Of a stretch of DNA of 64,000 nucleotides, positions 4,041-32,873 are shown piece by piece. Every line of letters starts with the position of its first letter. The stretch's first letter is position 1. The position numbers and the translations under genes were made by a program. Under the pieces are notes generated by a model. That model had not been told where the DNA came from, did not search any database, and worked only from the letters and a program-made list of their open reading frames with translations. The DNA lies in IMG/VR virus record IMGVR_UViG_3300022935_000005, positions 186,001 to 250,000 of that record. One strand, given 5' to 3'.

Positions 4041-4182
4041 GAATATTTCTGTGCTATTCCATATTTAATAGGGGAAAAGGTTTAATAATTTGGCTTCTAC
4101 TATACTAAGATCTTATCATGGTTTATACGACACAAGAAGCCCAAAAGAGAACAGCTTACAAAACTTAAGTGAGGAAGAACAT

Positions 4183-5265
4183 ATGTCAAGTAACAACAAA
4201 GATGATCAATACATTAACACACCTCAGGCGGATGACGATTTTGATTTCGTCATGGCATACGATGATGATCCTGCGGAGGGAGATGAAAGGCTCTTGCCTG
4301 AAAACTCTGCACGTTCCGCTATAAGCTGTGGTTTCATCGGAGTCGGGGGCGGAGGTGGAAAGCTTGCTAGCGCCTTTCTTGATGTAGGATTCAATAAGAC
4401 TCTACTAGTTAATACAACAGAGAAAGACCAGCCTGGCGGACTTGATGCAAACCACTTCCTATTAGTACCAGGCGCTGATGGTGTAGGTAAAGATGTCGAG
4501 TTGGGTAAGCAGGTTCTCGGTGAGAATTCAGCCATGGTTGAAGACGCTGTACGAACGCGTATTGGTCAGGTGGATTGGCTTTTCGTACTCGCTGGCGGCG
4601 GCGGAGGTACGGGTTCAGCTTGTCACGAGCTTCATTCTTCTCTATCACGTTATCTCGGGTCGGTAGAAGCTTCTGGCAATGTCGTCTATATAATTTCAAA
4701 GCCGACAGCTCAAGAGCTACTAAATCCAGCTATTAAGAAGAATTACTCTACCCTCATGTCGGATGTTGCCGATCACCCGCATATTGTGATCGACAATGAA
4801 AAACAGCTCCAGCTTCTGCGAGGCAAAGTTGGTATGCTTAATATGTTCCCTGCTGCTAATAAGAACTTTGCTAAGCTCTTTAGTCAAGTTCTCAAGCTTG
4901 CTGACGAGCACACCGAGATCCAGACTTTCGATAGTAAAGACCTAGAGCGTTGTCTAAAAGCTCCTGGTCGAATTGTTATTGGCTCTACGATCATCAAGGA
5001 TGTTAATAGAAATGACCTTGGGTCACTCGTCTATCAAGGATGCTTGCGTTCATCACCTTGCCCGACACCATCTGGTACTGCTACAACGGGTACACTACTT
5101 TTGATCGTCGACGGAAACATGGCTGCAGATCCTGATGTTAGTAGACGACTCGAATCAGCGTTCTCATATGTCGGTGGTAGAGCGGACGTCTTATTCTCGG
5201 GAGTTTATATGAAGGAAGGAATCCCTGGTTTAATTGGTCTAACGATGTTAGGTGGTTTGAAGTAA
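4183..5265 (+). CDS. tubulin/FtsZ-family GTPase (PhuZ-like)
   Basis: IGVGGGGGK, GADGVGKD, signature AGGGGGTGS, IVIDNEK; ATG 4183 follows GAGGAAG RBS. Confidence 0.88.
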   Translation: MSSNNKDDQYINTPQADDDFDFVMAYDDDPAEGDERLLPENSARSAISCGFIGVGGGGGKLASAFLDVGFNKTLLVNTTEKDQPGGLDANHFLLVPGADGVGKDVELGKQVLGENSAMVEDAVRTRIGQVDWLFVLAGGGGGTGSACHELHSSLSRYLGSVEASGNVVYIISKPTAQELLNPAIKKNYSTLMSDVADHPHIVIDNEKQLQLLRGKVGMLNMFPAANKNFAKLFSQVLKLADEHTEIQTFDSKDLERCLKAPGRIVIGSTIIKDVNRNDLGSLVYQGCLRSSPCPTPSGTATTGTLLLIVDGNMAADPDVSRRLESAFSYVGGRADVLFSGVYMKEGIPGLIGLTMLGGLK

Positions 5266-7169: not shown

Positions 7170-7509
7170 TGGTGGACCCGTCCGGTACTGCCCCGGAGTC
7201 CAAAACAACATTAGATTAAAGTCATTCACAAGCTTGTCTGGTCATTTCTCCGGCCAGAAGGATATTCACCATAGCTTTTCGCCTCCGTTGTGAAGTGGGA
7301 GGACTGGCGGCTTTTTATTTCTTGGCAGAACCACCTGCTAAAGTCTAAATTGGATAGATGGTTTTAGACAACCACCCGACTAAGCTGCTAGAGCAACGTT
7401 GTCGTAGTGATAATTGTTATTGGCAATTATAATTGTTGAACTTTTAAGGATGTATCTTTCCTGCTTGCACTCAAACCCTCCGTCGCCCTGTCGAAACTAG
7501 TTCGGGCCC
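7170..7509 (-). ncRNA. ssrA: tmRNA (one-piece, about 340 nt), tag ANNNYHYDNVALAA
   Basis: Minus strand begins GGGCCCGAACTAGTTTCGAC and ends GGACTCCGGGGCAGTACCGGACGGGTCCACCA; acceptor stem with G3-U70 pair; tag ORF 7424-7380 ends ALAA-stop. Confidence 0.95.
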
Positions 7510-7594
7510 ATGTTCATTTTAAGTATATTATGTAGAATAAAGTCGTAATACATGAGATATTTAAGATAGCGTGGTATAACAATAGGAGCCGCTT

Positions 7595-8470
7595 TTGAAG
7601 AATTTGCAAGACAAGCTTTTTGAAGCAGTACTTAAACGTCTGGTGTCTTCTCGTCTTGAAGAGTGTATCATCGTCGCCGGCGAGACGCAGGGTAAAAATA
7701 TCTTAGCTAAGTCTCGAGACAGAAACTATCATGCGCGTGTCGAGATAATCAGAGACCTATTAGATGACGGGACAGAAGTCGTTTACTTTGAGGATCTTGA
7801 TACTGGGTACGCTGAAGGTATGAACTCCCACGGCTTGGGAGTGGTGAATGCTGCCCTATCCATCAGCGATGACGAGAATGCAGTGAAAGGTAAAGTGAGA
7901 TCAGACGATGGTCCCAGAATGATTCAAGCCTTAAAGCATTCCAGCATAGACGATGCTGTCAAGTCTCTTGTCGGTTATAAGGGCGGCATTAAAGGTCATA
8001 CTTTCGTAGGGACTCCAGACGCAGTTTACAGTATAGAAATGTCATCCGAACACACGCCTGTCATTAATAAGCTTGACCCAACAACAGGTTTCGACGTTCG
8101 AACCAACCACGGTAAAGATCACCATGGTGCTGGGTACACTCCTGACAGACGCCCAAAAGATTACATGTCTTCTAAGATTAGAAAGGCTCAAGCAGAAGTG
8201 GAGCTAGCTGGAGTCAATGATTTTGATGAAGTCGCTCCTGCTTTAGCGAAGCAACACTTTGATCACGACTCAAATGATAACATGCTTCGTAGAGTACCAG
8301 ACAAAGCCGGGATGGTAACGACGAGTCAAGTGGCGATGCATCTTCCAAAAAGAGAGTTCGTATTCTACTACTTCCCAAACGAATGCGATTTTGAGGGCAT
8401 CGTCGATAAAACACCTGATGATTATGAACCCAAGATCAACGTTCGTGTCGTTCGCCGCGACGAGAAGTAG
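7595..8470 (+). CDS. Ntn-hydrolase (Cys nucleophile, C45/linear amide C-N hydrolase-like) with N-terminal leader
   Basis: CIIVAG..ILAKSRDRNY, EGMNSHGLGVVNAAL, VRTNH. Confidence 0.65.
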   Translation: MKNLQDKLFEAVLKRLVSSRLEECIIVAGETQGKNILAKSRDRNYHARVEIIRDLLDDGTEVVYFEDLDTGYAEGMNSHGLGVVNAALSISDDENAVKGKVRSDDGPRMIQALKHSSIDDAVKSLVGYKGGIKGHTFVGTPDAVYSIEMSSEHTPVINKLDPTTGFDVRTNHGKDHHGAGYTPDRRPKDYMSSKIRKAQAEVELAGVNDFDEVAPALAKQHFDHDSNDNMLRRVPDKAGMVTTSQVAMHLPKREFVFYYFPNECDFEGIVDKTPDDYEPKINVRVVRRDEK

Positions 8471-24283: not shown

Positions 24284-24361
24284 GGGGCTATAGCTCAATC
24301 AGGTCAGAGCAACCGGCTCATAACCGGCAGGTTGTAGGTTCAAATCCTACTAGCCCTACCA
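24284..24361 (+). tRNA. tRNA with CAT anticodon, probably Ile2 (copy 1)
   Basis: GGGGCTA/TAGCCCT acceptor, CCGG-CTCATAA-CCGG anticodon arm, GGTTCAAATCC, CCA end; adjacent to tilS. Confidence 0.92.
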
Positions 24362-24386
24362 AATGTTTAATCGGAGAAATGAATCA

Positions 24387-25040
24387 ATGATCCGACTTTC
24401 TTTTAAGCTTCCTTCTGAGATTGCAGTTGCCGTTTCTGGAGGGGCTGATTCTATGGCAGCCCTTGACTTTTTGCGACAGAATAGAAGGGTCAAGGTCCTC
24501 CACTTTAATCACGGCACCCACGGCGCCTCCGCCGCCGAGAGGGTAGTAACGAAGTATTGTGATCTACACAATCTAGAATTGGTGGTAGGCCATCTTGATG
24601 AATCCCCTGATTCGGGACAGTCACTTGAAGATTTCTGGCGTCAAGCTCGTTATTCTTTTTTTAGTGACAGTTGCGGTGGTCTTCCTGTAGTCACATGTCA
24701 TCACCTTGACGATGTGGCTGAGACATGGCTGTTCACCTCTTTGAATGGAAACCCTAAGCTTATTCCTTCTAAGAGAGACAATTACTTGAGACCCTTTCTG
24801 CAAACCCGGAAAGCCGTCTTTGAAGATTGGTGTGACAGGAAAGACGTGGTGTATCACTACGATGAGAGTAACAACGACACGAGGTTTAATAGAAACTTCA
24901 TCCGACATGAGATCATGCCTCGCGCGCTAAGGGTGAATCCGGGACTACATAAAGTTCTCCGTAAGAAGATCCAGCAAGATGTTGACGCTCATAGTTCTAT
25001 CCACCAAGAAATGCGGATGATGTGGGCAAGCCTCACATAG
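24387..25040 (+). CDS. tilS: tRNA(Ile)-lysidine synthetase, catalytic domain only
   Basis: AVSGGADSM PP-loop, HFNHG, RQARY, HHLDDVAETWL, LRPFL, DESN..RNFIRH. Confidence 0.88.
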   Translation: MIRLSFKLPSEIAVAVSGGADSMAALDFLRQNRRVKVLHFNHGTHGASAAERVVTKYCDLHNLELVVGHLDESPDSGQSLEDFWRQARYSFFSDSCGGLPVVTCHHLDDVAETWLFTSLNGNPKLIPSKRDNYLRPFLQTRKAVFEDWCDRKDVVYHYDESNNDTRFNRNFIRHEIMPRALRVNPGLHKVLRKKIQQDVDAHSSIHQEMRMMWASLT

Positions 25041-25318
25041 TAACAGAGTTTAAGAATGCTTAGTATTAAGACGGGTGATATTGTCAAGTTTAAACCAAAG
25101 TACTATGGCCCTAACCAACCTGACCAGTGGGTAGGTGTCACAGGTATAGTACTTGAGGTGATTGATGCCGACGGCTCGAACACTGGATTAGAAGTGCTAG
25201 TTCAGCATCCTGATGAGCCAGCACCGATACCTGTTTTTGCTTTTGTTTCTGACGTAGAAAAGGTCAACTGTGAAGTCTGTGATTGTTATCCTTGTGATTG
25301 CCACCCTTGGGACTAAAG

Positions 25319-25867
25319 ATGATTACGTATGATTTCCCTCCTTCTACTCGTTCAATGACACGTAGAGAGAGGTATGCTGAAAAGCAGAAGACAGCAGAGT
25401 ATCTACCAGTCATTATCGGCTGTGTTAATTTCGAGCATGATGGAAACCTTGCTTTCGTGATGCGTGCCGCTGCATGTTTTGGCGTGAAAGAGGTCCATGT
25501 TGTCGGATCTGTGCCCCACCGCGCAGAGCTAAAGAAGCTTTCTGGATCAATGTGCGATCTCGTAGAGATTGTTCAGCATAAGAGTCCTCGTTCATTTATC
25601 GAGTGGTGTACAGATAACCACGTGAAGATCGTAGCTGCTGAGCTTTGCGAAAAGTCTGAAAAGCTTCGTGATTATAATTTCATGTTTGAGGGTCTTACAT
25701 GCATCTTTACCGGACATGAAACATCTGGAGTCCCTGGAGAGATTATTCATGTTGCCGACTGCGTAGAGATCGATATGAGAGGCCCAGGCTTTTGCTTGAA
25801 CACCGCTCAGACGGCGAATATCATGTTGTATGAAGCATCAAAGCAGTACATCGGAGGTGCAGCTTGA
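25319..25867 (+). CDS. SpoU/TrmH-family RNA methyltransferase
   Basis: GNLAFVMRAAACFG, FTGHETSGVP, IDMRGPGFCLNTA. Confidence 0.85.
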   Translation: MITYDFPPSTRSMTRRERYAEKQKTAEYLPVIIGCVNFEHDGNLAFVMRAAACFGVKEVHVVGSVPHRAELKKLSGSMCDLVEIVQHKSPRSFIEWCTDNHVKIVAAELCEKSEKLRDYNFMFEGLTCIFTGHETSGVPGEIIHVADCVEIDMRGPGFCLNTAQTANIMLYEASKQYIGGAA

Positions 25868-26776
25868 AAGTAAAAGATCTTATCAAAATGTTAGAGCTCC
25901 AAGACCCTGAAGAGCGAGTCGTGATGAAGAACCTGCAGGCAGACCCTCGTGAGCGACCTCATGTATATGAACAGTTCAGAGTATATGAGCGTGACGGAGA
26001 CGTCGTGGTCGACGCTTACAGGAAGGTCTATAAGTGATTCGTAGCTGCGAATTCATAGAAGCGCACAATGTCGATGCGCTCGGAAATAAGATCAAGTCAA
26101 TATGGGTCCCTCGCCCGACAAGCTGGCTGGGAGGCTGGGCTCGACATCAGTGGCTTAAGAAACACTTCGGTCAAGAGTGCTCGATTGCGAGCCCTGAGTG
26201 GTGGAAAGTTTTGACAGACCGACACGGTCCACCAAAGGTACTTATCGAAGAAGACGGAGTTTACAGAGTGGAGAGCAAAGAATGAAGTGGGAAGTTAGAC
26301 CCCTCGAGCCCGACGGCTGGGGAATTTTTTTGATGCAGAAATTTTGCAAGACCGATGAACCTGTCTGTTATGCGAGGTCAGCCTCGAAAGAAGCAGCCGA
26401 GCGTATGGTCAAGCGGATGAACGAAGGATGAGGTGCCACAAGTGTGACGAGGGTGTCCTGCAGATAACAGCACTAACCCCGCCAGACGAAGGGTGGGCTA
26501 TTGGCTGTAATCGGTGTGATTATTCCAGTTGGATCCCAACAGCAGACCAAATGGTAACAGCACAGCCTATGATTGCGCCAACAAAGATCAAGTGGAAAAT
26601 CAAATGGATTCCTCAAAGGGAAAGCTCTTATCAAGGGCTATCTGAGCATCCACTAGATTGCCCTTGGCATAAAGATTGGCACGCTTGTAATTGTGGTTTA
26701 TATAATACAAAGGAAGACGAAGAATGAAAGTCGTCACCTAAGTCTAAACAAGAAGTCATAAATAATCTTCTAAAGC

Positions 26777-26805
26777 GTGTAAACGAACGGCCACTGTGAT
26801 ATAAT
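26777..26805 (+). promoter_or_regulatory. sigma70-like promoter of tRNA-Arg unit
   Basis: GTGTAA-17 nt-TATAAT. Confidence 0.7.
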
Positions 26806-26884
26806 CTAAATGTTGGTGGGGATGGAAACTAACCACCGCGACCTTTGAAAACTTAATAGCGAAAAGCATTTAGTTATTGTGAAT

Positions 26885-27166
26885 GCGCTCATAGCTCAGC
26901 TGGATAGAGCAACGGCCTTTAAGCAATAGGAGCCTCATATTGGAAACAGTATGTTGCGTACACTCTCAAATTCGGGGAAACCTTTAAAATGGCAATCCCG
27001 AGCCAAGCCTCGAAAGAGGAAGGTGTAGAGACTAAACGGGAGTGGCCTAAGTCCCAATGGGATATGGTTGAGAGATAGTCCAGACCACAAACACTTCGGT
27101 GGTAGCGAAAGCTATAGTGGTAAGCTAAGCCGTGGGTCCCAGGTTCGAGTCCTGGTGAGCGCGCCA
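26885..27166 (+). tRNA. tRNA-Arg(UCU) interrupted by a group I intron
   Basis: Exon 1 26885-26919 ends ACGGC-CTT; exon 2 27125-27166 begins CTAA-GCCGT and ends CCA; spliced loop CT-TCT-AA. Confidence 0.9.
26920..27124 (+). mobile_element. group I intron (205 nt, IC3-like, no ORF) in tRNA-Arg
   Basis: Core CAAATTCGGGGAAACC / GGCAATCCCGAGCCAAG / GTAGAGACTA / GATAGTCC; upstream exon U, terminal G; guide UAGGAG pairs with ligated CUU|CUA. Confidence 0.9.
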
Positions 27167-27316
27167 TTTATGTGGGGGACACAGACCAGAGAGAAACAGG
27201 TGATGCTGGCTCGTGGTTGCGTAAGCGTGGTCGAAGTACTGACCTTACAGGCTGTGTCTAGATGAGGAAGCTGGGAACCTCATCACTTTTTCTTCAAAAA
27301 ATATATCGCTGAAGTC

Positions 27317-27345
27317 TTGTAAACACAGGTCCTTGGAGATATAAT
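27317..27345 (+). promoter_or_regulatory. sigma70-like promoter of tRNA operon
   Basis: TTGTAA-17 nt-TATAAT. Confidence 0.7.
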
Positions 27346-27389
27346 CTAAAAGTAAAAGTTGGTGGAAATACCACACAACTTCAAAATAC

Positions 27390-27467
27390 GGGGCTATAGC
27401 TCAATCAGGTCAGAGCGTCCGGCTCATAACCGGCAGGTTGTAGGTTCAAATCCTACTAGCCCTACCA
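27390..27467 (+). tRNA. tRNA with CAT anticodon, probably Ile2 (copy 2)
   Basis: Identical to 24284-24361 except two bases (GAGC-GT-CCGG vs GAGC-AA-CCGG). Confidence 0.92.
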
Positions 27468-27472
27468 ATTTT

Positions 27473-27796
27473 GGCTGAATGGTGGAATCGGTATACACAG
27501 GAGACTTCGCGGGATCAAGGTAAAAACTTGATCAAATATTGAGCACCTTGGGAGAAATCCCATGAGTGAATCTGGTCAAATTCGGGGAAACCTTAACAGA
27601 TAAAGCTGATGGCAATCCCGAGCCAAGCCCGAAAGGGAAGGTGTAGAGACTTGACGGCCAGCCCTTAACAGGTAATGCTGAAGGTGAAGAGAAAGTCCAG
27701 ACCACAAACAACTTCGGTTGGCAGTGAAAACTGTAGAGGGTAAGAAAATCTCCCGGTCACATGACCTTGCGGGTTCGAGTCCCGCTTCAGCTACCA
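27473..27796 (+). tRNA. tRNA-Leu(UAA) interrupted by a group I intron
   Basis: Exon 1 27473-27507 ends GGAGA-CTT; exon 2 27745-27796 begins AAAA-TCTCC, long variable arm, CCA. Confidence 0.92.
27508..27744 (+). mobile_element. group I intron (237 nt) in tRNA-Leu(UAA)
   Basis: Same core motifs; guide TTGAG; terminal G; extra GATCAAG/CTTGATC hairpin near the 5' end. Confidence 0.9.
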
Positions 27797-27952
27797 ATCA
27801 TCGATATATTTATCAACAACAAAATCGTCATTGGGTGTTTCGGTGACGTTGCAACGCCGCTGGCGCCATAGTACATTATACCTAGTACATGTGAACCCAG
27901 GAGAAACACCCTCCTGGTAGTAACATCATTCCGACATATTCATAACACATAT

Positions 27953-28027
27953 TGGGGAGTAACTCAGTGGTAGAGTGCGCGGCTGTTAACCGCTCGGTCG
28001 TGGGTTCGAATCCCACCTTCCCAGCCA
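27953..28027 (+). tRNA. tRNA-Asn(GUU)
   Basis: GCGG-CTGTTAA-CCGC, GGTTCGAATCC, CCA. Confidence 0.93.
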
Positions 28028-28033
28028 TCTTTC

Positions 28034-28108
28034 GCTCCCATAGTTTAACGGTAAGAATTCGGCGTTTTCACCGCTGCGGTAGGGGTTCGATTCCCCTTGG
28101 GAGTACCA
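28034..28108 (+). tRNA. tRNA-Glu(UUC)
   Basis: CGGCG-TTTTCAC-CGCTG, GGTTCGATTCC, CCA. Confidence 0.9.
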
Positions 28109-28143
28109 AAACTTTTCGCTATTTCAAATATTGATATAATTTA

Positions 28144-28417
28144 GGGCCTATAGCTCAACAGGTAGAGCATCGGACTTTCAATGGGAGCTTCATCAGGTAA
28201 CTGATGTCGAATAACTGCTCAAATTCGGGGAACTCTTAACAGGTAATGCTGATGACAATCCCGAGCCAAGCTTCGAAAGAAGAAGGTGTAGAGACTAGAC
28301 GGGCAGCACCCCACGTGGGTGAAGGGATAGTCCAGACCACAAACACTTCGGTGGTAGCGAAAGCTATAGTGGTACGTAATCCGCAGGTTCAGGGTTCGAG
28401 TCCCTGTGGGCCCACCA
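28144..28417 (+). tRNA. tRNA-Lys(UUU) interrupted by a group I intron
   Basis: Exon 1 28144-28178 ends CGGA-CTTT; exon 2 28377-28417 begins TAA-TCCG and ends CCA; spliced loop CT-TTT-AA. Confidence 0.87.
28179..28376 (+). mobile_element. group I intron (198 nt) in tRNA-Lys, inserted after anticodon position 35
   Basis: Core CAAATTCGGGGAA / CAATCCCGAGCCAAG / GTAGAGACTA / GATAGTCC; 3' end nearly identical to the Arg intron; terminal G. Confidence 0.87.
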
Positions 28418-28630
28418 TTCTACTTCAAGGAACACCACTATGTTAGTTACAAGACTGTCAGCGCCTTCGCCGGGTATGCCAGATTACTTTGAACTGTACT
28501 CTAAGTGGTGGGCTGTAGCTGTTCGCACTGGAGAAAATCATGCGCTACAGGAAGCTCATCGCTTTGCGAGACTAGCTGAAGAGTTCGGTCAAGCGATTAT
28601 TCATGATGACGAAACACAAGAAGATTTTTA

Positions 28631-28716
28631 GCCTGAGTGATGGAATGGTAGACATGAAGCACTCAAAATGCTTTGCTCTTAAGAGCGTGTGAGTTCGAAT
28701 CTCACCTCAGGCACCA
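28631..28716 (+). tRNA. tRNA-Leu(CAA)
   Basis: AAGCA-CTCAAAA-TGCTT, long variable arm, CCA. Confidence 0.93.
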
Positions 28717-28734
28717 GTTTATTTTTTATTTTGT

Positions 28735-28810
28735 TGGGGTATGGCGCAATAGGTAGCGCAGCGGCCTTTGACTCCGCAGGTTCTAGGTTCGAGTCCTAGT
28801 GCCCCAGCCA
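28735..28810 (+). tRNA. tRNA-Gln(UUG)
   Basis: TGGGGTA/TGCCCCA acceptor, CT-TTG-AC loop, GGTTCGAGTCC, CCA. Confidence 0.9.
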
Positions 28811-29056
28811 GTTTCTATAAGAGAGTGTGATATGGATACAGCAACTTTCATTCTAGGTCTTGGTGTAATTATTATAGGAGTTTTGTCCCTGATCGTGGTC
28901 AAGCTGCCTAAGTTCCCAGGACCGCCCACCGACGTAGAAGATGAAGATCCAGGACGTGAAGTATGAAGTTTCGACCTGAACTTCCTGACGTTTTTGGCTT
29001 TTTTGTTATCATTCTTTACGCTGTTTTTATTGTGAAGCTTTTTTGTGGTTAGCGCG

Positions 29057-29428: not shown

Positions 29429-30097
29429 TTGATGCCCGAAGTACTAGATCAAGCGATATACCTTTTAGCAGCCGCCTCTCTCGGTTCTATGATCGGACTA
29501 GAGAGAGAAGTGCATGGCCAACCTGCTGGTCTTAGGACACACATGATCCTCTCCACTGGGGCTGCGCTAGCTGCAATACTATCCATATCATATTCTCAAT
29601 TTCTGTCAAATCCAGACTTGCCGTCTGACCCTGGTCGCATTGTAGCTCAAGTAGTCAGCGGAGTGGGTTTTCTCGGCGCCGGCGCGATTATGAAGATGGG
29701 CGTTACTGTTAAGGGGCTAACAACGGCTAGCTCACTTTGGACGACTGCTATCGTAGGTATTGCGTGCGGTAGCGGCTATTTAGAGCTTGGGGCTATAACG
29801 ACGGTCCTCGTGTTTGTGATCTTGACAATTATTAATAAGGTTGAGAAAGCCTTGTTGACGACGTACAAAACTCACACTCTTAAAATTACTCTAGATGATA
29901 GACCTGGGATCGTGAAAGACGTCAAGACTTGCCTCGAGGAAAATAACGTCAAGCTTGTGTCTTTAAGCGCTGGTATGCCTGATAGAGAGAGTCTAAATCT
30001 TTCCATGGTGATCAGGAAACCTGAAGATCTTGGCATGGACAGTCTAATAAATACTTTGAACGGGTTCGCCGAGACTCGGTCGATGGATTTAAAATGA
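29429..30097 (+). CDS. MgtC/SapB-family membrane protein with ACT-like C-domain
   Basis: IGLERE..PAGLRTH, DPGRIVAQVVSGVGFLGAG, GLTTASSLW. Confidence 0.9.
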   Translation: MMPEVLDQAIYLLAAASLGSMIGLEREVHGQPAGLRTHMILSTGAALAAILSISYSQFLSNPDLPSDPGRIVAQVVSGVGFLGAGAIMKMGVTVKGLTTASSLWTTAIVGIACGSGYLELGAITTVLVFVILTIINKVEKALLTTYKTHTLKITLDDRPGIVKDVKTCLEENNVKLVSLSAGMPDRESLNLSMVIRKPEDLGMDSLINTLNGFAETRSMDLK

Positions 30098-30160: not shown

Positions 30161-30526
30161 GTGTACTATCAAGCTAAGCAGCTAGCAATGAACAATGGTC
30201 GTCCTTACCATCTAGCAGCTATTCTGAGAAGGAATGGTCGAGTCGTTAAGGTCGGCGAAAATACTAATAAGACACACCCACGGTTCAAGCGCCAATATAA
30301 AGACGGTACGTGGGGATCCCATATGCATGCTGAAATGAACGTTCTACGTTTCGCTCAGCCTGGCGATGAGATTGAGGTGATGCGCTTTACCAAGTGTAGT
30401 GATCATCCGACGATGGCAAAGCCTTGTTCCATTTGTGAGTCAGAGATTCGTAAGTCTGGAATCAAGCGTGTCAAGTACACAAACTGGGATGGTGACTGGG
30501 AAGTGCTTGAAGTATCGAATACTTAA
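30161..30526 (+). CDS. zinc-dependent nucleoside/nucleotide deaminase
   Basis: HAE..KPCSIC zinc motif. Confidence 0.75.
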   Translation: MYYQAKQLAMNNGRPYHLAAILRRNGRVVKVGENTNKTHPRFKRQYKDGTWGSHMHAEMNVLRFAQPGDEIEVMRFTKCSDHPTMAKPCSICESEIRKSGIKRVKYTNWDGDWEVLEVSNT

Positions 30527-30550: not shown

Positions 30551-32023
30551 ATGATGCATTATAACACAGACTCAAAAATTCTCGCTGAGATATCAGTGAA
30601 TAAGGGGGAGAGCGTAAAGCTAAAGACAGGTGCTATCTGTACTGAGACTGGCACCTACAAGGGTCGAGCTCCTTCTGCTAAATCTTACGCTATAGATGAG
30701 ATTACGAGGGACAAAATTGACTGGTCTGCCAATAGAGGGATATCAGAAGATGAATTCGCGGAAGAGCTTTCTGCGTTCCAAGATTATAAGGGTACAATAG
30801 TTCCCTTATTTTGTCAAGAGCTGCAAGCGGTTAGAGATACAGGTCATAGAACTGACATTGTCGTTTTTACGGAAATGGCTCACCACGCATTGTTCGCCAG
30901 GAACATGTTCATTACGGATGTCGTGGGATTCGGGAAAACACAGCAGCCATGGCGGATTTATCACTTCCCAAAAAAAGAGGAAGAAGCTAAAGTACTAATA
31001 TCTTTCAAGAAGAAAGCGATTCTGATCACTGGGACATTTTATTCGGGAGAGATCAAGAAGAGTATTTTTTCGGTACTAAATTTCGAGTTTCCTCAATCTG
31101 GCCACTTGCCGATGCATTGCTCAGTGAATGTAGACAAAGAGCGAAGGAACCCTGCTGTTTTCTTCGGTCTGTCAGGAACAGGAAAGACAACTCTTTCTTC
31201 TGACGAAAATCGCATTTTGATCGGTGACGACGAGCATGGGTGGACCGATAGCGGCTTGACTAATTTCGAAGGCGGTTGCTATGCGAAGACGATTCGACTA
31301 TCTAAAGAAGCTGAACCCCAGATCTGGGATGCGTGCAATAAGCCTGGAACAATATTGGAGAATGTTGCCTTTAATGAAGACCTGATGCCGGATTTTGATG
31401 ACGGCACTCTTACCGAGAACAGCAGAGCTTCATACGCATGTTCTAGTGTTCCCGGCGCTGATCATAAAGGGTATGTCAATGAACACCCTGAGAACGTTAT
31501 CATGCTTACCTGTGACGCATTTGGTGTGCTACCTCCAGTGATGAAACTGTCACCTGACGAGGCTGTTACACAATTTTTGCTTGGTTATACCGCGAAAGTA
31601 GCCGGTACTGAAGCTGGTGTCGTAGAACCGCAAGCAACATTCTCTGCATGCTTTGGCGCTCCCTTCATGCCTCTGCACCCTCGAGAGTATGCTGCTATCT
31701 TAAGGGAAAAGTTGGTAAAACACGGCACCTCGTGTTGGCTGGTGAATACTGGCTGGACGGGAGGCTCTTACGGAGTGGGAAGAAGAATGCCGATATCTAC
31801 TACGAGAGAGATTATCCAGAAGATTCATACCGGTGAGTTACGAGACTGCGCTACATTCGTTCATGAACCAACAGGCTTTACAGTACCGGACTGCGATAGT
31901 ATTGAAGAAACAATTCTTTACCCAGAAAAGGGCTGGAGCTCTAGAGAAGATTATGATTCCAAGTCTGCTGAGCTAATGTCTTTGTTCCGGGAACAGATGA
32001 AAAACATTGGGATCTCTAGTTAA
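30551..32023 (+). CDS. pckA: phosphoenolpyruvate carboxykinase (ATP)
   Basis: YSGEIKKSIF, MHCS, FFGLSGTGKTTLS, IGDDEHGW, NFEGGCYAK, TENSRASY, FSACFGAPF. Confidence 0.93.
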   Translation: MMHYNTDSKILAEISVNKGESVKLKTGAICTETGTYKGRAPSAKSYAIDEITRDKIDWSANRGISEDEFAEELSAFQDYKGTIVPLFCQELQAVRDTGHRTDIVVFTEMAHHALFARNMFITDVVGFGKTQQPWRIYHFPKKEEEAKVLISFKKKAILITGTFYSGEIKKSIFSVLNFEFPQSGHLPMHCSVNVDKERRNPAVFFGLSGTGKTTLSSDENRILIGDDEHGWTDSGLTNFEGGCYAKTIRLSKEAEPQIWDACNKPGTILENVAFNEDLMPDFDDGTLTENSRASYACSSVPGADHKGYVNEHPENVIMLTCDAFGVLPPVMKLSPDEAVTQFLLGYTAKVAGTEAGVVEPQATFSACFGAPFMPLHPREYAAILREKLVKHGTSCWLVNTGWTGGSYGVGRRMPISTTREIIQKIHTGELRDCATFVHEPTGFTVPDCDSIEETILYPEKGWSSREDYDSKSAELMSLFREQMKNIGISS

Positions 32024-32168: not shown

Positions 32169-32873
32169 TTGAGTAACAGAAATTTGCAAATTCCTTGGGC
32201 AAATATCTCTGATATGATGTCTGCCTTGATGATGGTGTTTTTGCTGATCAGCGTTACATACAGCTCTCAAGTGAAAAACAAGTCTGAGCAGCTAGAAGAG
32301 AAAAATAAGAAGATCCACAAGATTACGGCGGATTTCTCAGACAGCAGGTATGAGATATACGCTAGTTTGAATGAAGCTTTTTCTCATAAGTTTGAAGAGT
32401 GGCACGCTACGCTAGACAGAGAAACTCTGACTTTACGCTTTAACAATCCTGCTATCTTATTCGAGCCGGGTAGCGACAGGTTGACGCCAGCTTTTGAAAA
32501 GATACTTGCTGACTTGTGGACAAATTACATAGAAGTGCTTCGTAGATACCCAGAAGATGTGGCTGAGGTCAAAATACAAGGTCATACTTCTTCTGAATGG
32601 TCTGATTCCACCATCGAAGAGTCTTATTTCAACAACATGAAACTGTCTCAAGAAAGGACTCGCTCTACGCTTATCTTCTGCTATAACTTGACCCCTATGG
32701 ACAAAAGGGATTGGGTGATAGAGAATGTTACTGCTAACGGTATGTCTTTTGCTAGAACAATTAAGGCACCTGACGGCTCTGAAGACGTGGTGAGGTCAAG
32801 AAGAGTAGAGTTTACAGTCGTTGTCAATTCACATATCGCTCTAGAAAAGATAGGAGAAGCTTTAGATGATTGA
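32169..32873 (+). CDS. ZorB/MotB-like membrane protein with OmpA-type peptidoglycan-binding domain
   Basis: PWANISDMMSALMMVFLLI TM with conserved Asp; ILFEPGS, IQGHTSSEW, NMKLSQER, SRRVEF. Confidence 0.8.
   Translation: MSNRNLQIPWANISDMMSALMMVFLLISVTYSSQVKNKSEQLEEKNKKIHKITADFSDSRYEIYASLNEAFSHKFEEWHATLDRETLTLRFNNPAILFEPGSDRLTPAFEKILADLWTNYIEVLRRYPEDVAEVKIQGHTSSEWSDSTIEESYFNNMKLSQERTRSTLIFCYNLTPMDKRDWVIENVTANGMSFARTIKAPDGSEDVVRSRRVEFTVVVNSHIALEKIGEALDD

What the first reader, a model, noticed from the sequence alone, without database searches (positions are those of the whole stretch)
26885..28417. Three phage tRNAs each split by a related, ORF-less group I intron, two in unusual tRNA species
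Seen: introns of 205, 237 and 198 nt interrupt the anticodons of tRNA-Arg(UCU) and tRNA-Leu(UAA) after U34 and of tRNA-Lys(UUU) after U35. All share the P/Q/R/S core, follow an exon U and end in G. Each has a guide adapted to its own exons (UAGGAG pairs fully with CUU|CUA). The 3' hairpins covary (CAC-TTCG-GTG vs CAAC-TTCG-GTTG; TAGC-GAAA-GCTA vs CAGT-GAAA-ACTG). Known: classic bacterial tRNA group I introns are in Leu(UAA), fMet, Ile(CAU) and Arg(CCU). Inference: local spread of one minimal ribozyme by reverse splicing. Possible uses include hiding anticodon loops from host anticodon nucleases (PrrC cuts tRNA-Lys(UUU)) or timing tRNA supply. Standard tRNA scans may miss these genes.
Basis: partly seen in the sequence, partly recalled or inferred. 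Interest (0 to 1): 0.85.

Follow-up and report, generated by a model that had tools for sequence, protein, structure and literature searches.

The report
Self-splicing introns inside three phage tRNA genes
Three tRNA genes (Arg, Leu, Lys) in a probable large phage are each split in the anticodon loop by a small self-splicing group I intron of the classic bacterial tRNA-intron family; such introns turn out to be common but unannotated in phage sequence data, so phage tRNA sets are being under-counted.

Summary
Introns of 205, 237 and 198 nt (window 26920-27124, 27508-27744, 28179-28376) interrupt tRNA-Arg(UCU) and tRNA-Leu(UAA) after U34 and tRNA-Lys(UUU) after U35. Removing them in silico gives three canonical tRNAs with a 7-nt anticodon loop and an encoded CCA. 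All three match the Rfam group I model, follow an exon U and end in G. Their helices P2-P9 are supported by strong covariation across 104 relatives.

They belong to the compact bacterial tRNA anticodon-loop intron family (IC3 type by recall; Azoarcus/cyanobacterial kind). A model built from phage copies scores bacterial tRNA introns about as well as the window's own.

The claim of unusual tRNA hosts holds against the literature I could search, but not against the databases. In capped samples of IMG/VR contigs the same family splits Leu(UAA), Arg(UCU), Lys(UUU), CAU, Asn, Gln, Glu, Thr and Ser tRNAs, often several per tRNA island. Bacteria hold Arg(UCU) and Lys(CUU) cases too.

"Local spread by reverse splicing" is neither shown nor excluded. 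The anticodon-nuclease shield idea has no support.

Verdict: real, probably functional ribozymes. They are a new member of a known kind and expose a widespread annotation blind spot.

The parts
26885..26919 (+). tRNA-Arg(UCU) 5' exon, ending in C32-U33-U34
26920..27124 (+). Group I intron 1, 205 nt. Guide UAGGAG 26927-26932. P2 about 26936-26953 (7 bp, GAAA loop). P3 26962-26967/27038-27043. P4 26972-26977/26996-27001. P6 and P6a 27002-27024. P7 27028-27033/27077-27081. P8 27044-27069 with a CCUAAG...UAUGG receptor motif. P9/P9a/P9b three-way junction 27085-27120. Terminal G at 27124.
   Evidence: Rfam RF00028 62.6 bits; model R1 199 bits; helix mapping; the MFE fold recovers P2, P3, P4, P6a, P8 and P9, z = -2.6.
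27125..27166 (+). tRNA-Arg(UCU) 3' exon, starting C35-U36-A37 and ending in CCA
27473..27507 (+). tRNA-Leu(UAA) 5' exon, ending in C32-U33-U34
27508..27744 (+). Group I intron 2, 237 nt. An extra 7-bp hairpin lies in the P1 loop (27513-27533). Guide UAUUGAG 27537-27543. P3 27572-27577/27656-27661. P4 27582-27587/27616-27621. Extended P5. P7 27646-27651/27694-27698. P9 domain 27702-27740. Terminal G at 27744.
   Evidence: Rfam RF00028 70.2 bits; R1 179 bits.
27745..27796 (+). tRNA-Leu(UAA) 3' exon, with a long variable arm and CCA
28144..28178 (+). tRNA-Lys(UUU) 5' exon, ending in C32-U33-U34-U35
   Evidence: With introns allowed, ARAGORN miscalls this gene as SeC. The U(-1) and terminal-G rules and the family alignment fix the junction.
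28179..28376 (+). Group I intron 3, 198 nt. Guide UGGGAG 28182-28187. P2 has a GUAA loop. P3 28215-28220/28301-28306. P4 28225-28230/28259-28264. P7 28291-28296/28329-28333. P8 is short (28307-28321) and has no 11-nt receptor. P9 domain 28337-28372. Terminal G at 28376.
   Evidence: Rfam RF00028 49.2 bits, E 1.1e-10, just under the gathering score of 50; R1 177 bits.
28377..28417 (+). tRNA-Lys(UUU) 3' exon, starting U36-A37-A38, with discriminator A and CCA
27317..27345 (+). Promoter-like site (TTGTAA, 17 nt, TATAAT) upstream of tRNA(CAU) 27390 and the split tRNA-Leu. Similar GATATAAT boxes lie at about 26797-26805 before tRNA-Arg and 28132-28140 before tRNA-Lys.
   Evidence: (10 of 12 match; consensus match only) and direct reading. 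Inferred, not shown.

Best explanation
The three insertions are active, ORF-less, self-splicing group I introns of the compact bacterial tRNA anticodon-loop family. They sit in tRNA genes of a large, uncultivated phage.

Inferred mechanism, by homology with the Azoarcus and Anabaena pre-tRNA introns:
1. The pre-tRNA is transcribed from the tRNA island.
2. The guide near the intron's 5' end pairs with the last loop bases of the 5' exon to form P1. This is C32-U33-U34 for Arg and Leu, and C32 to U35 for Lys. The final U forms a U.G wobble.
3. An exogenous guanosine bound in P7 attacks that site.
4. The 5' part of the guide pairs with the first bases of the 3' exon (P10), the terminal G enters the G site, and the exons are ligated.
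5. The products are ordinary tRNA-Arg(UCU), tRNA-Leu(UAA) and tRNA-Lys(UUU). They read AGA, UUA and AAA, codons this 46% GC genome uses heavily.

The introns are best seen as near-neutral selfish passengers of a lineage that is widespread in phage tRNA islands. That lineage has moved repeatedly between anticodon loops. It needs only a U at position -1 and a guide of 3-4 nt, and most hosts share the loop start CUU.

Shown: sequence anatomy, family membership, covariation and distribution. Inferred: splicing activity, order of events and mode of spread.
For: In-silico splicing restores three canonical tRNAs with CCA.

Rfam RF00028 hits all three introns. The family model R1 scores them at 177-199 bits over its full length.

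RNAalifold on 43 phage-contig copies recovers P2, P3, P4, P5, P6, P6a, P8, P9, P9a and P9b, and 26 of 39 pairs show compensatory changes. On 104 phage and bacterial copies, 97.2% of cells are paired, 32 of 39 pairs change on both sides, and the covariation score is 0.606 against 0.19 when shuffled and at most 0.10 when slid.

The same model scores bacterial tRNA introns over its full length. Alphaproteobacterial Leu(UAA) copies score 170-181 bits, cyanobacterial Leu(UAA) 108-125, and Polynucleobacter/Comamonadaceae CAU about 95.

The guides fit their own exons, and guide and target co-vary across the family:
- UUUGAGU or AUUGAGC for Leu CUU|AAA
- UAGGAG for both Arg CUU|CUA and Lys CUU|UUA
- GGGU for CAU loops cut after U33
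- GCAG for Asn CUGU|U

No intronless copies of these three tRNAs exist in the window. AGA makes up 34% of Arg codons.

Relatives in other viral contigs occur in tRNA islands. L101 has 4 family-model intron matches (ARAGORN places three in split tRNAs) beside 17 intact tRNAs. L020 has split Leu and Arg tRNAs.
Against: No transcript or splicing data exist. P1 is only 3-4 bp, and P10 only 2 bp for Leu and Lys. The Lys intron falls 0.8 bits below the Rfam gathering score, lacks the P8 tetraloop receptor, and its MFE z-score is weak at -1.3. The phage nature of the window rests on indirect evidence, because the 64 kb hold no capsid or terminase gene.
Confidence: 0.82

Rival explanations
1. One minimal ribozyme spread recently within this genome by reverse splicing, from one tRNA to the other two.
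For: Arg and Lys introns are each other's closest relatives (77-81% identity, weak sister grouping 83/64). Their 3' P9 domain is 49 of 51 identical, including a UUCG P9a hairpin shared by no other copy in the 43-sequence A2 alignment. The guide UAGGAG fits both CUU|CUA and CUU|UUA through G.U. An AU test does not reject a clade of all three (p 0.298). No homing endonuclease gene lies in or next to the introns.
Against: The three are only about 75% identical overall, no closer than to introns in other contigs. The Arg intron is 79% identical to L052 Arg, and the Leu intron 79% to L022 Leu with 97/92 support. Arg(UCU) and Leu(UAA) introns at the same sites occur in many other viral contigs, which suggests inheritance together with the tRNA. 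The near-identical 3' segment is explained equally well by DNA-level gene conversion between copies 1.2 kb apart.
Confidence: 0.2
2. The introns are kept because they help the phage. They could keep the anticodon loop of the precursor out of reach of host anticodon nucleases or modification enzymes, time the tRNA supply through GTP- or Mg-dependent splicing, or make the tRNA gene DNA immune to a nuclease that targets the intronless allele.
For: Introns recur in phage tRNA islands and mostly in U34 tRNAs (Leu UAA, Arg UCU, Lys UUU, Gln UUG, Glu UUC, Thr UGU, Ser UGA). From established knowledge, this class includes known anticodon-nuclease targets: PrrC cuts tRNA-Lys(UUU). Viral copies form a largely separate clade from bacterial ones (viral label needs 8 changes against 35 when shuffled). 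HNH genes directly follow the split tRNA(CAU) in Klebsiella phage Muenster and E. coli phage Turkey5.
Against: After splicing the tRNA is ordinary, so the mature pool is not shielded. The U34 bias follows from the chemistry (U needed at -1, shared CUU loop start) and from which tRNAs AT-leaning phages carry. Intronless tRNA-Gln(UUG), Glu(UUC) and Thr(UGU) sit in the same island. Nothing in the window links to a defence or counter-defence system.
Confidence: 0.12
3. The introns are decayed relics and the three genes are tRNA pseudogenes.
For: The Lys copy is just below the Rfam gathering score and has a reduced P8. P1 and P10 are short.
Against: All core helices are intact with compensatory changes. 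P4, P7 and the junctions are nearly invariant. U(-1) and the terminal G are kept in all three. The exons encode flawless cloverleaves with CCA. The phage has no other genes for these three tRNAs.
Confidence: 0.04
4. The window is cellular DNA (a small-genome bacterium or a misbinned fragment), so these are ordinary bacterial tRNA introns rather than phage ones.
For: The window holds a tmRNA gene, PEPCK, MgtC, an OmpA-like protein, and TilS-like and SpoU genes. It has no capsid, portal or terminase gene. The same family is frequent in bacterial genomes.
Against: 14 kb of the window differ by a single base from an IMG/VR viral contig of 83 kb. Most long ORFs have no Pfam family. There are tail-fibre-like PHROG hits and other PHROG families. 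The 64 kb contain no ribosomal or other housekeeping genes. A dense tRNA island with TATAAT boxes is typical of large phages. The nearest intron relatives lie in viral contigs.
Confidence: 0.08

Closest known systems
[quoted passage not shown] Homologues in Alphaproteobacteria and Acidobacteria were found here.
   Same: The insertion point is the same as in the window's Leu intron, between U34 and A35. The guide is the same kind (AUUGAGC). The core is the same, as is the 3' domain: P9 enclosing two hairpins, one of them capped by GAAA. Bradyrhizobium copies even carry the same 16-mer, AGTCCAGACCACAAAC.
   Different: The host replicon here is a phage. The window's copy has an extra hairpin in the P1 loop. 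The cyanobacterial copies form their own clade (100/100) and score lower with the phage-derived model, 108-125 bits.
Azoarcus tRNA-Ile(CAU) and Agrobacterium-type tRNA-Arg(CCU) introns
   Same: Compact ORF-less ribozymes of about 205 nt in the anticodon loop (PMC13168695). The AAGGUGUAGAGACUAGACGG core is shared. Relatives were recovered here in Polynucleobacter, Comamonadaceae, Bartonella, Mesorhizobium and Rhodobacter.
   Different: Those introns lie after nucleotide 36, 3' of the anticodon. The window's lie inside the anticodon, after U34 or U35, and in different tRNA species.
Phage group I introns in protein-coding genes (T4 td, nrdB and nrdD; Twort and Staphylococcus K-like phages; Pelagibacter phage capsid gene)
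   Same: Same ribozyme class in the same kind of genome. The capsid-gene intron of Pelagibacter phage HTVC120P scores 159 bits over the full length of the model built from the tRNA introns.
   Different: Those interrupt mRNAs and often carry or neighbour homing endonuclease genes. The window's interrupt tRNAs and have no such gene in or beside them.
'Enigmatic' tRNA introns of Lak megaphages (PMC6784885)
   Same: Introns in phage-encoded tRNA genes, which that paper reports as the first of their kind.
   Different: The Lak introns were found with eukaryote-mode tRNAscan, are not reported there as group I ribozymes, and one is predicted to encode a tRNA. I did not compare their sequences.
Group I introns in the T-loop of tmRNA genes (PMC11915505)
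   Same: Small, mostly ORF-less group I introns in a tRNA-like structural RNA. The same boundary rules apply, and several neighbouring subsites are in use.
   Different: The loop differs (T-loop rather than anticodon loop), and they are bacterial.

Membership tests
Group I intron (Rfam RF00028) | Conserved catalytic core: P3-P8 and P4-P6 domains with P7 (elements P, Q, R, S) | tested here: met
   RF00028 scores 62.6, 70.2 and 49.2 bits. P2-P9 are recovered with 26 of 39 and 32 of 39 covarying pairs. The P7 strands G(A)GACU and AGUCC are present in all three copies. P7 itself is invariant, and part of it was in the search pattern, so it shows no covariation.
Group I intron (Rfam RF00028) | 5' splice site after a U that forms a U.G wobble with the internal guide in P1 | tested here: met
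   The exons end in CUU, CUU and CUUU. The guides are GAG (within UAGGAG), GAG (within UAUUGAG) and GGAG (within UGGGAG). P1 is short, at 3-4 bp.
Group I intron (Rfam RF00028) | 3'-terminal guanosine (omega G) and P10 pairing with the 3' exon | tested here: met
   All three end in G, within the family-conserved ending GUGGUAAG or GUGGUACG. P10 is 3 bp for Arg but only 2 bp for Leu and Lys.
Group I intron (Rfam RF00028) | Guanosine-dependent self-splicing | not testable with these tools
   Needs in vitro transcription and splicing, or RNA sequencing.
Compact bacterial tRNA anticodon-loop introns (IC3 type) | Located in the anticodon loop of a tRNA, with excision restoring a 7-nt loop and a canonical tRNA | tested here: met
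   Arg(tct), Leu(taa) and Lys(ttt), each with CCA.
Compact bacterial tRNA anticodon-loop introns (IC3 type) | Homology to accepted members (cyanobacterial Leu(UAA), Azoarcus-type CAU, Agrobacterium-type Arg(CCU)) | tested here: met
   Model R1, built from phage copies, matches bacterial tRNA introns over positions 1-216 of 216 at 95-181 bits. They align in A3 with 97% of cells paired. The window copies fall in the mixed bacterial/viral half of the tree. The subgroup label IC3 itself is from memory; no subgroup-specific model was run.
Compact bacterial tRNA anticodon-loop introns (IC3 type) | About 200-250 nt, no P5abc, no ORF | tested here: met
   The lengths are 205, 237 and 198 nt. P5 is 2 bp plus a short extension. 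An intron of at most 237 nt cannot hold an endonuclease gene. The listed ORFs that overlap the introns run into exons or spacers.
Compact bacterial tRNA anticodon-loop introns (IC3 type) | Two GAAA tetraloop-receptor clamps (L2-P8 and L9-P5); feature recalled from the Azoarcus structures | tested here: inconclusive
   The Arg intron has GAAA in L2 and L9b and an exact CCUAAG...UAUGG motif in P8. The Leu intron has GAAA loops and a variant receptor. The Lys intron has GUAA in L2 and a plain CC:GG helix as P8. These are sequence motifs only; no 3D test was done.
Homing-endonuclease-mobilised phage group I introns (T4 td type) | Endonuclease gene inside the intron or immediately adjacent | tested here: not met
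   No ORF fits inside the introns. Ten neighbouring ORFs gave no HNH, GIY-YIG or LAGLIDADG hit. By contrast, HNH genes follow the split tRNA(CAU) of phages Muenster and Turkey5.
Tailed phage genome | Virion or packaging hallmark genes, or identity to a recognised viral genome | tested here: inconclusive
   There is one mismatch in 13,999 nt against IMG/VR contig UViG_3300018421_000017. Tail-fibre-like PHROG hits were found. There is no capsid or terminase gene in the window and no megablast match among 50,697 phage records.

The most novel reading that the evidence does not exclude
Phage tRNA islands harbour a radiating, endonuclease-free lineage of IC3 ribozymes. It retargets itself among anticodon loops by changing 1-3 guide nucleotides, which would be natural transposition by reverse splicing. 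One example is the step from Arg CUU|CUA to Lys CUU|UUA, which share the guide UAGGAG. Another is the one-base slip to CUUU|UAA with the guide UGGGAG seen here. Phages would retain these introns because the precursor state benefits them, through protection of the loop or gene from tRNA-directed nucleases or through timed tRNA release.
Probability: 0.12. Interest if true: 0.8.

Novelty: new member of a known kind. Interest (0 to 1): 0.55.

Why it matters
1. Annotation. Default tRNA finders and deposited annotations miss these genes, so phage tRNA repertoires and codon-supply analyses are systematically incomplete. Examples are the window itself, Klebsiella phage Muenster, E. coli phage Turkey5 and a 735-kb uncultured phage.

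2. Biology of mobile ribozymes. A 2014 review stated that no phage group I intron sits in a tRNA gene, yet the family is frequent in viral contigs. It occupies at least ten tRNA species and four loop positions (after nucleotides 33, 34, 35 and 36), with guides that co-vary with their targets. This is a natural data set on how endonuclease-free group I introns change targets.

3. Tools. These are 200-nt ribozymes, apparently with simple three- to four-nucleotide guides. They add natural diversity to the Azoarcus/Anabaena scaffolds used for trans-splicing and RNA circularisation.

It is not a new mechanism.

Tried and rejected
- Megablast of the locus and of 20 kb of the window against 50,697 phage records found no relative of the phage, only tRNA and intron fragments.
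- Brute-force enumeration of splice-site pairs followed by ARAGORN was far too permissive. It needed the conserved 3' end, U(-1), the terminal G, a 7-nt loop and stem pairing as filters. A second automatic pipeline, based on ARAGORN's own intron calls, mis-set some junctions, including the window's Lys (191 instead of 198 nt), and lost the Arg-after-33 group. The counts are therefore approximate.
- ARAGORN with introns allowed miscalls the Lys gene as SeC(tca). I rejected this because it violates the terminal-G rule and the family alignment.
- Trees of about 170-190 columns do not resolve where the three window introns sit. The AU test is undecided.
- MFE folds of the Leu and Lys introns alone do not reproduce the full core. 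The comparative structure was used instead.
- PHROG and Pfam scans of 30 ORFs did not find virion hallmark genes.
- Nine literature searches found no report of group I introns in phage tRNA genes. The library lacks most subscription journals, so absence is not proven.
- I did not write a dot-bracket structure by hand. The RNAalifold/Infernal structure omits P1, P7 and P10, which were read directly from the sequence.
Full report
**1.

Reading window 26500-28900 and locating the exon ends gives three split genes.
- tRNA-Arg: exons 26885-26919 and 27125-27166, intron 26920-27124, 205 nt.
- tRNA-Leu: exons 27473-27507 and 27745-27796, intron 27508-27744, 237 nt.
- tRNA-Lys: exons 28144-28178 and 28377-28417, intron 28179-28376, 198 nt.

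Joining the exons in a script and running ARAGORN gives tRNA-Arg(tct), tRNA-Leu(taa) and tRNA-Lys(ttt). Each has a standard cloverleaf, a 7-nt anticodon loop (CUUCUAA, CUUAAAA, CUUUUAA) and an encoded CCA. The junctions lie after U34, U34 and U35. They are unambiguous, given that the base before each intron is U and the last intron base is G.

Default ARAGORN and the Rfam tRNA model find the seven uninterrupted tRNAs of the island but none of these three. ARAGORN with introns allowed finds them, but miscalls the third.

**2. They are group I introns, and not by chance**

Rfam RF00028 matches all three. The scores are 70.2 bits (Leu), 62.6 (Arg) and 49.2 (Lys, 0.8 below the gathering score), with E-values from 1e-10 to 6e-17. 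A search of the whole window at a permissive threshold finds no fourth copy. The three copies align with 75% mean column identity and share long invariant blocks.

**3. Relatives and structure**

A 16-mer from the conserved P7-P9 junction was scanned against IMG/VR.

I fixed splice sites using four filters: the conserved 3' end (..UAGUGGUAAG), U at -1, a 7-nt loop, and ARAGORN on the spliced product. About 65 of these matches are split tRNA genes.

Forty-three distinct copies were aligned. RNAalifold recovered P2, P3, P4, P5, P6, P6a, P8 and a P9 three-way junction (P9, P9a, P9b). In 26 of 39 pairs, compensatory double changes were seen.

A covariance model from this alignment (R1) scores the window's copies at 199, 179 and 177 bits and finds nothing else in the window.

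An alignment of 104 phage and bacterial copies fitted to the model was then counted.
- 97.2% of cells are paired, against 75% when shuffled and at most 43% when slid.
- 32 of 39 pairs change on both sides.
- The covariation score is 0.606, against 0.19 when shuffled and at most 0.10 when slid.

The alignment is fitted to the structure, which favours it, but the margin is large.

P1, P7 and P10 are not in that structure, because of the pseudoknot and the exon pairing, so I read them directly.
- P7 is G(A)GACU with AGUCC in all three copies.
- The guides are UAGGAG, UAUUGAG and UGGGAG.

The MFE fold of the Arg intron alone reproduces most of the comparative structure.

**4. Which family**

The pattern AAGGTGNAGAGACTNNACGG was scanned over one genome per bacterial species.

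Typing the interrupted genes gave mostly the classic cases: about 57 Leu(UAA) after nucleotide 34, 11 CAU, and at least 6 Arg(CCU) after nucleotide 36. The hosts are Cyanobacteria, Alpha- and Betaproteobacteria, Acidobacteria, Bacteroidota, Chloroflexota and others.

R1, built only from phage-contig copies, matches these bacterial introns over its full length at 95-181 bits. Bradyrhizobium and Mesorhizobium copies carry the very same 16-mer.

The window's introns are therefore members of the compact bacterial tRNA anticodon-loop family, the one that includes the 205-nt Azoarcus intron (PMC13168695). The subgroup name IC3 and the L2-P8 and L9-P5 tetraloop-receptor clamps are recalled, not tested.

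At the sequence level:
- The Arg intron has GAAA in L2 and L9b and an exact CCUAAG...UAUGG motif in P8.
- The Lys intron has GUAA in L2 and a plain CC:GG helix instead. This looks like a coordinated swap of tertiary partners (inference).

**5. Distribution, which decides the novelty question**

These are capped, non-exhaustive viral samples, with approximate counts.

| tRNA and site | Contigs |
|---|---|
| Leu(UAA) after 34 | about 50 distinct introns |
| Arg(UCU) after 34 | 7 others (L020, L052, L056, L060, L090, L108, L112) |
| Arg(UCU) after 33 | 6 (L001, L042, L082, L099, L117, L119) |
| CAU after 33 | 6-7 |
| Lys(UUU) after 34 | 4 (L007, L047, L277, L306) |
| Lys(CUU) after 35 | L263 |
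| Asn(GUU) after 35 | 3 |
| Gln(UUG), Glu(UUC), Thr(UGU), Ser(UGA), Ile(UAU), Arg(CCU) | single cases |

Islands with several split tRNAs recur.
- L101 has four family-model intron matches, three of which ARAGORN places in split tRNAs, beside 17 intact tRNAs.
- L298 has two family-model intron matches.
- L020 has split Leu and Arg tRNAs.

Bacteria also hold non-classic hosts.
- Arg(UCU) after 36 occurs in Vibrio agarilyticus SM6 and a Rhodothermaceae MAG.
- Lys(CUU) after 35 occurs in a Pyrinomonadaceae MAG. It has the guide AAUGGGAGC, the same design as the window's Lys intron.
- Thr(GGU) after 36 occurs in Magnetovibrio and an Acetobacteraceae MAG.

Deposited phage genomes carry unannotated examples.
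- Klebsiella phage Muenster and E. coli phage Turkey5 each have a tRNA(CAU) split after nucleotide 36, followed by an HNH gene.
- The 735-kb uncultured phage LR756501 has a split tRNA-Leu(UAA) that scores 211 bits.
- The capsid-gene intron of Pelagibacter phage HTVC120P belongs to the same family at 159 bits.

The exact site of the window's Lys intron, UUU cut after U35, was seen only here. Some high-GC "viral" contigs (L113, L263, L306) cluster with bacterial copies and may be host fragments.

**6. Literature**

The 2014 review of bacterial group I introns states that all phage introns observed to that date are in protein-coding genes, despite the many phage tRNA genes (PMC3984707). The 2019 Lak megaphage paper reports unclassified tRNA introns and says introns in phage tRNAs had not been reported before (PMC6784885). 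A 2025 group I intron database paper and recent jumbo-phage papers mention no tRNA cases in phages.

Nine full-text searches found no description of group I introns in phage tRNA genes. The library is incomplete, so this means "not found", not "absent".

**7. How it most likely works**

This is by homology and is inferred. The guide pairs with C32-U33-U34, or C32 to U35 for Lys, and the last U pairs with G. Guanosine bound at P7 cleaves there. The upstream part of the guide then pairs with the first 2-3 bases of the 3' exon, and the terminal G is exchanged for the exon. The product is an ordinary tRNA.

The window has 45.9% GC. AGA is its commonest Arg codon (34%), and AAA and UUA are well used. 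There are no intronless genes for these tRNAs, so the phage presumably depends on splicing.

**8. Origin of the three copies**

They are about as far from each other as from copies in other contigs.
- The Leu intron pairs with a Leu intron of another contig (97/92).
- Arg and Lys pair weakly (83/64).
- A clade of all three is not rejected (AU p 0.298).
- In the joint tree the three are unresolved, in the half that mixes bacterial and viral copies.

The Arg and Lys introns are mosaic. They match in 49 of 51 columns in the P9 domain, including a UUCG hairpin shared by no other copy in the 43-sequence alignment, but in only 64% of the core. That suggests local gene conversion or a recent partial copy.

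Across the family, tRNA identity changes at least 17 times on the tree of 43 copies, where 12 is the minimum possible. Guides track their targets, and UAGGAG serves both Arg and Lys loops. Jumps between loops clearly happened. Whether they went through reverse splicing or through DNA recombination cannot be told here.

**9. Function beyond selfishness**

The anticodon-nuclease idea is weak. Only the precursor is shielded, and the bias towards U34 tRNAs follows from the need for U at -1 and from the shared CUU loop start. Intronless Gln(UUG), Glu(UUC) and Thr(UGU) genes sit in the same island.

**10. Is it a phage?**

Probably. 13,999 nt of the window differ by one base from the end of an 83-kb IMG/VR contig. 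That puts the genome at roughly 119 kb or more, assuming the two assemblies represent one genome. Most ORFs are orphans, some hit PHROGs including tail-fibre families, and there are no housekeeping genes. No capsid or terminase gene lies in the window, so I leave about 8% for a cellular origin.

**Verdict**

It is a new member of a known ribozyme family in a new setting, namely phage tRNA genes and new tRNA hosts. It is not an isolated oddity but a widespread, unannotated feature of viral sequence data.

Noticed in passing
window 7170-7637 (-): A tmRNA gene lies in a probable phage. Rfam tmRNA scores 77.8 bits at 7170-7509, with a poorly aligned middle. An overlapping hit to the permuted-tmRNA model (56.3 bits) lies at 7380-7637. 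ARAGORN did not call it.
   Followed up: no
window 24284-25040 and 27390-27467 (+): Two near-identical tRNA(CAU) genes. The first is followed directly by a 225-aa PP-loop protein (Pfam ATP_bind_3, 6.8e-34), the fold of tRNA-Ile lysidine synthetase. This looks like a phage-encoded tRNA-Ile2 with its own modifying enzyme. ATA makes up 29% of Ile codons.
   Followed up: partly
window 25298-25867, 29429-30097, 30161-30526, 30551-32023, 32169-32873 (+): The tRNA island is interleaved with a SpoU-family RNA methylase, an MgtC-family protein, a small cytidine-deaminase-fold protein, a full-length ATP-dependent PEP carboxykinase (541 bits) and an OmpA-domain protein. These are unusual cargo for a phage.
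   Followed up: partly
window 4090-5265 (+): A 391-aa ORF with a weak tubulin/FtsZ GTPase-domain hit (E 7e-5, below the Pfam cut-off). It could be a PhuZ-like phage tubulin.
   Followed up: no
window about 26797-26812, 27337-27352, 28132-28143 (+): A GATATAAT box precedes each of the three transcription units that hold a split tRNA, and the first two continue with CTAAA. Short hairpins lie between box and tRNA (about 26813-26840 and 27358-27381).
   Followed up: no
L121 about 1413-1724 (Klebsiella phage Muenster MT708547) and L245 about 617-915 (E. coli phage Turkey5 PQ471516): Cultured jumbo phages carry an unannotated tRNA(CAU) split after nucleotide 36 by a group I intron of about 230-245 nt. 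An annotated HNH endonuclease gene follows shortly downstream. In Muenster a tRNA gene annotated as Asn lies between the two.
   Followed up: partly
L246 620-910 (uncultured 735-kb phage LR756501): A split tRNA-Leu(UAA) with a 205-nt intron of the same family (211 bits with model R1).
   Followed up: partly
L123 1443-1659 (Pelagibacter phage HTVC120P) and L247 649-823: Capsid genes annotated as two fragments are separated by an intron of the same family as the tRNA introns (159 and 128 bits). The lineage therefore also lives in phage protein genes.
   Followed up: partly
L101 (IMGVR_UViG_3300031998_003058, 10.3 kb): Four matches to the intron family model within about 4.6 kb of a tRNA island that also has 17 intact tRNAs. 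ARAGORN places three of the four in split tRNAs. Two of the copies are sisters on the tree (100/99), a clearer candidate for local duplication than the window.
   Followed up: partly
L149 (Pyrinomonadaceae MAG), L209 (Vibrio agarilyticus SM6), L162 (Rhodothermaceae MAG), L145 and L155: Bacterial tRNA genes outside the four classic hosts are split by the same family: Lys(CUU) after nucleotide 35, Arg(UCU) after 36 and Thr(GGU) after 36.
   Followed up: partly
window 27170-27300 and 27800-27950 (+): Non-coding spacers of 120-150 nt follow the split Arg and Leu tRNAs. They contain inverted repeats, and a hairpin followed by a T run lies at about 27262-27294. No Rfam match was found.
   Followed up: no
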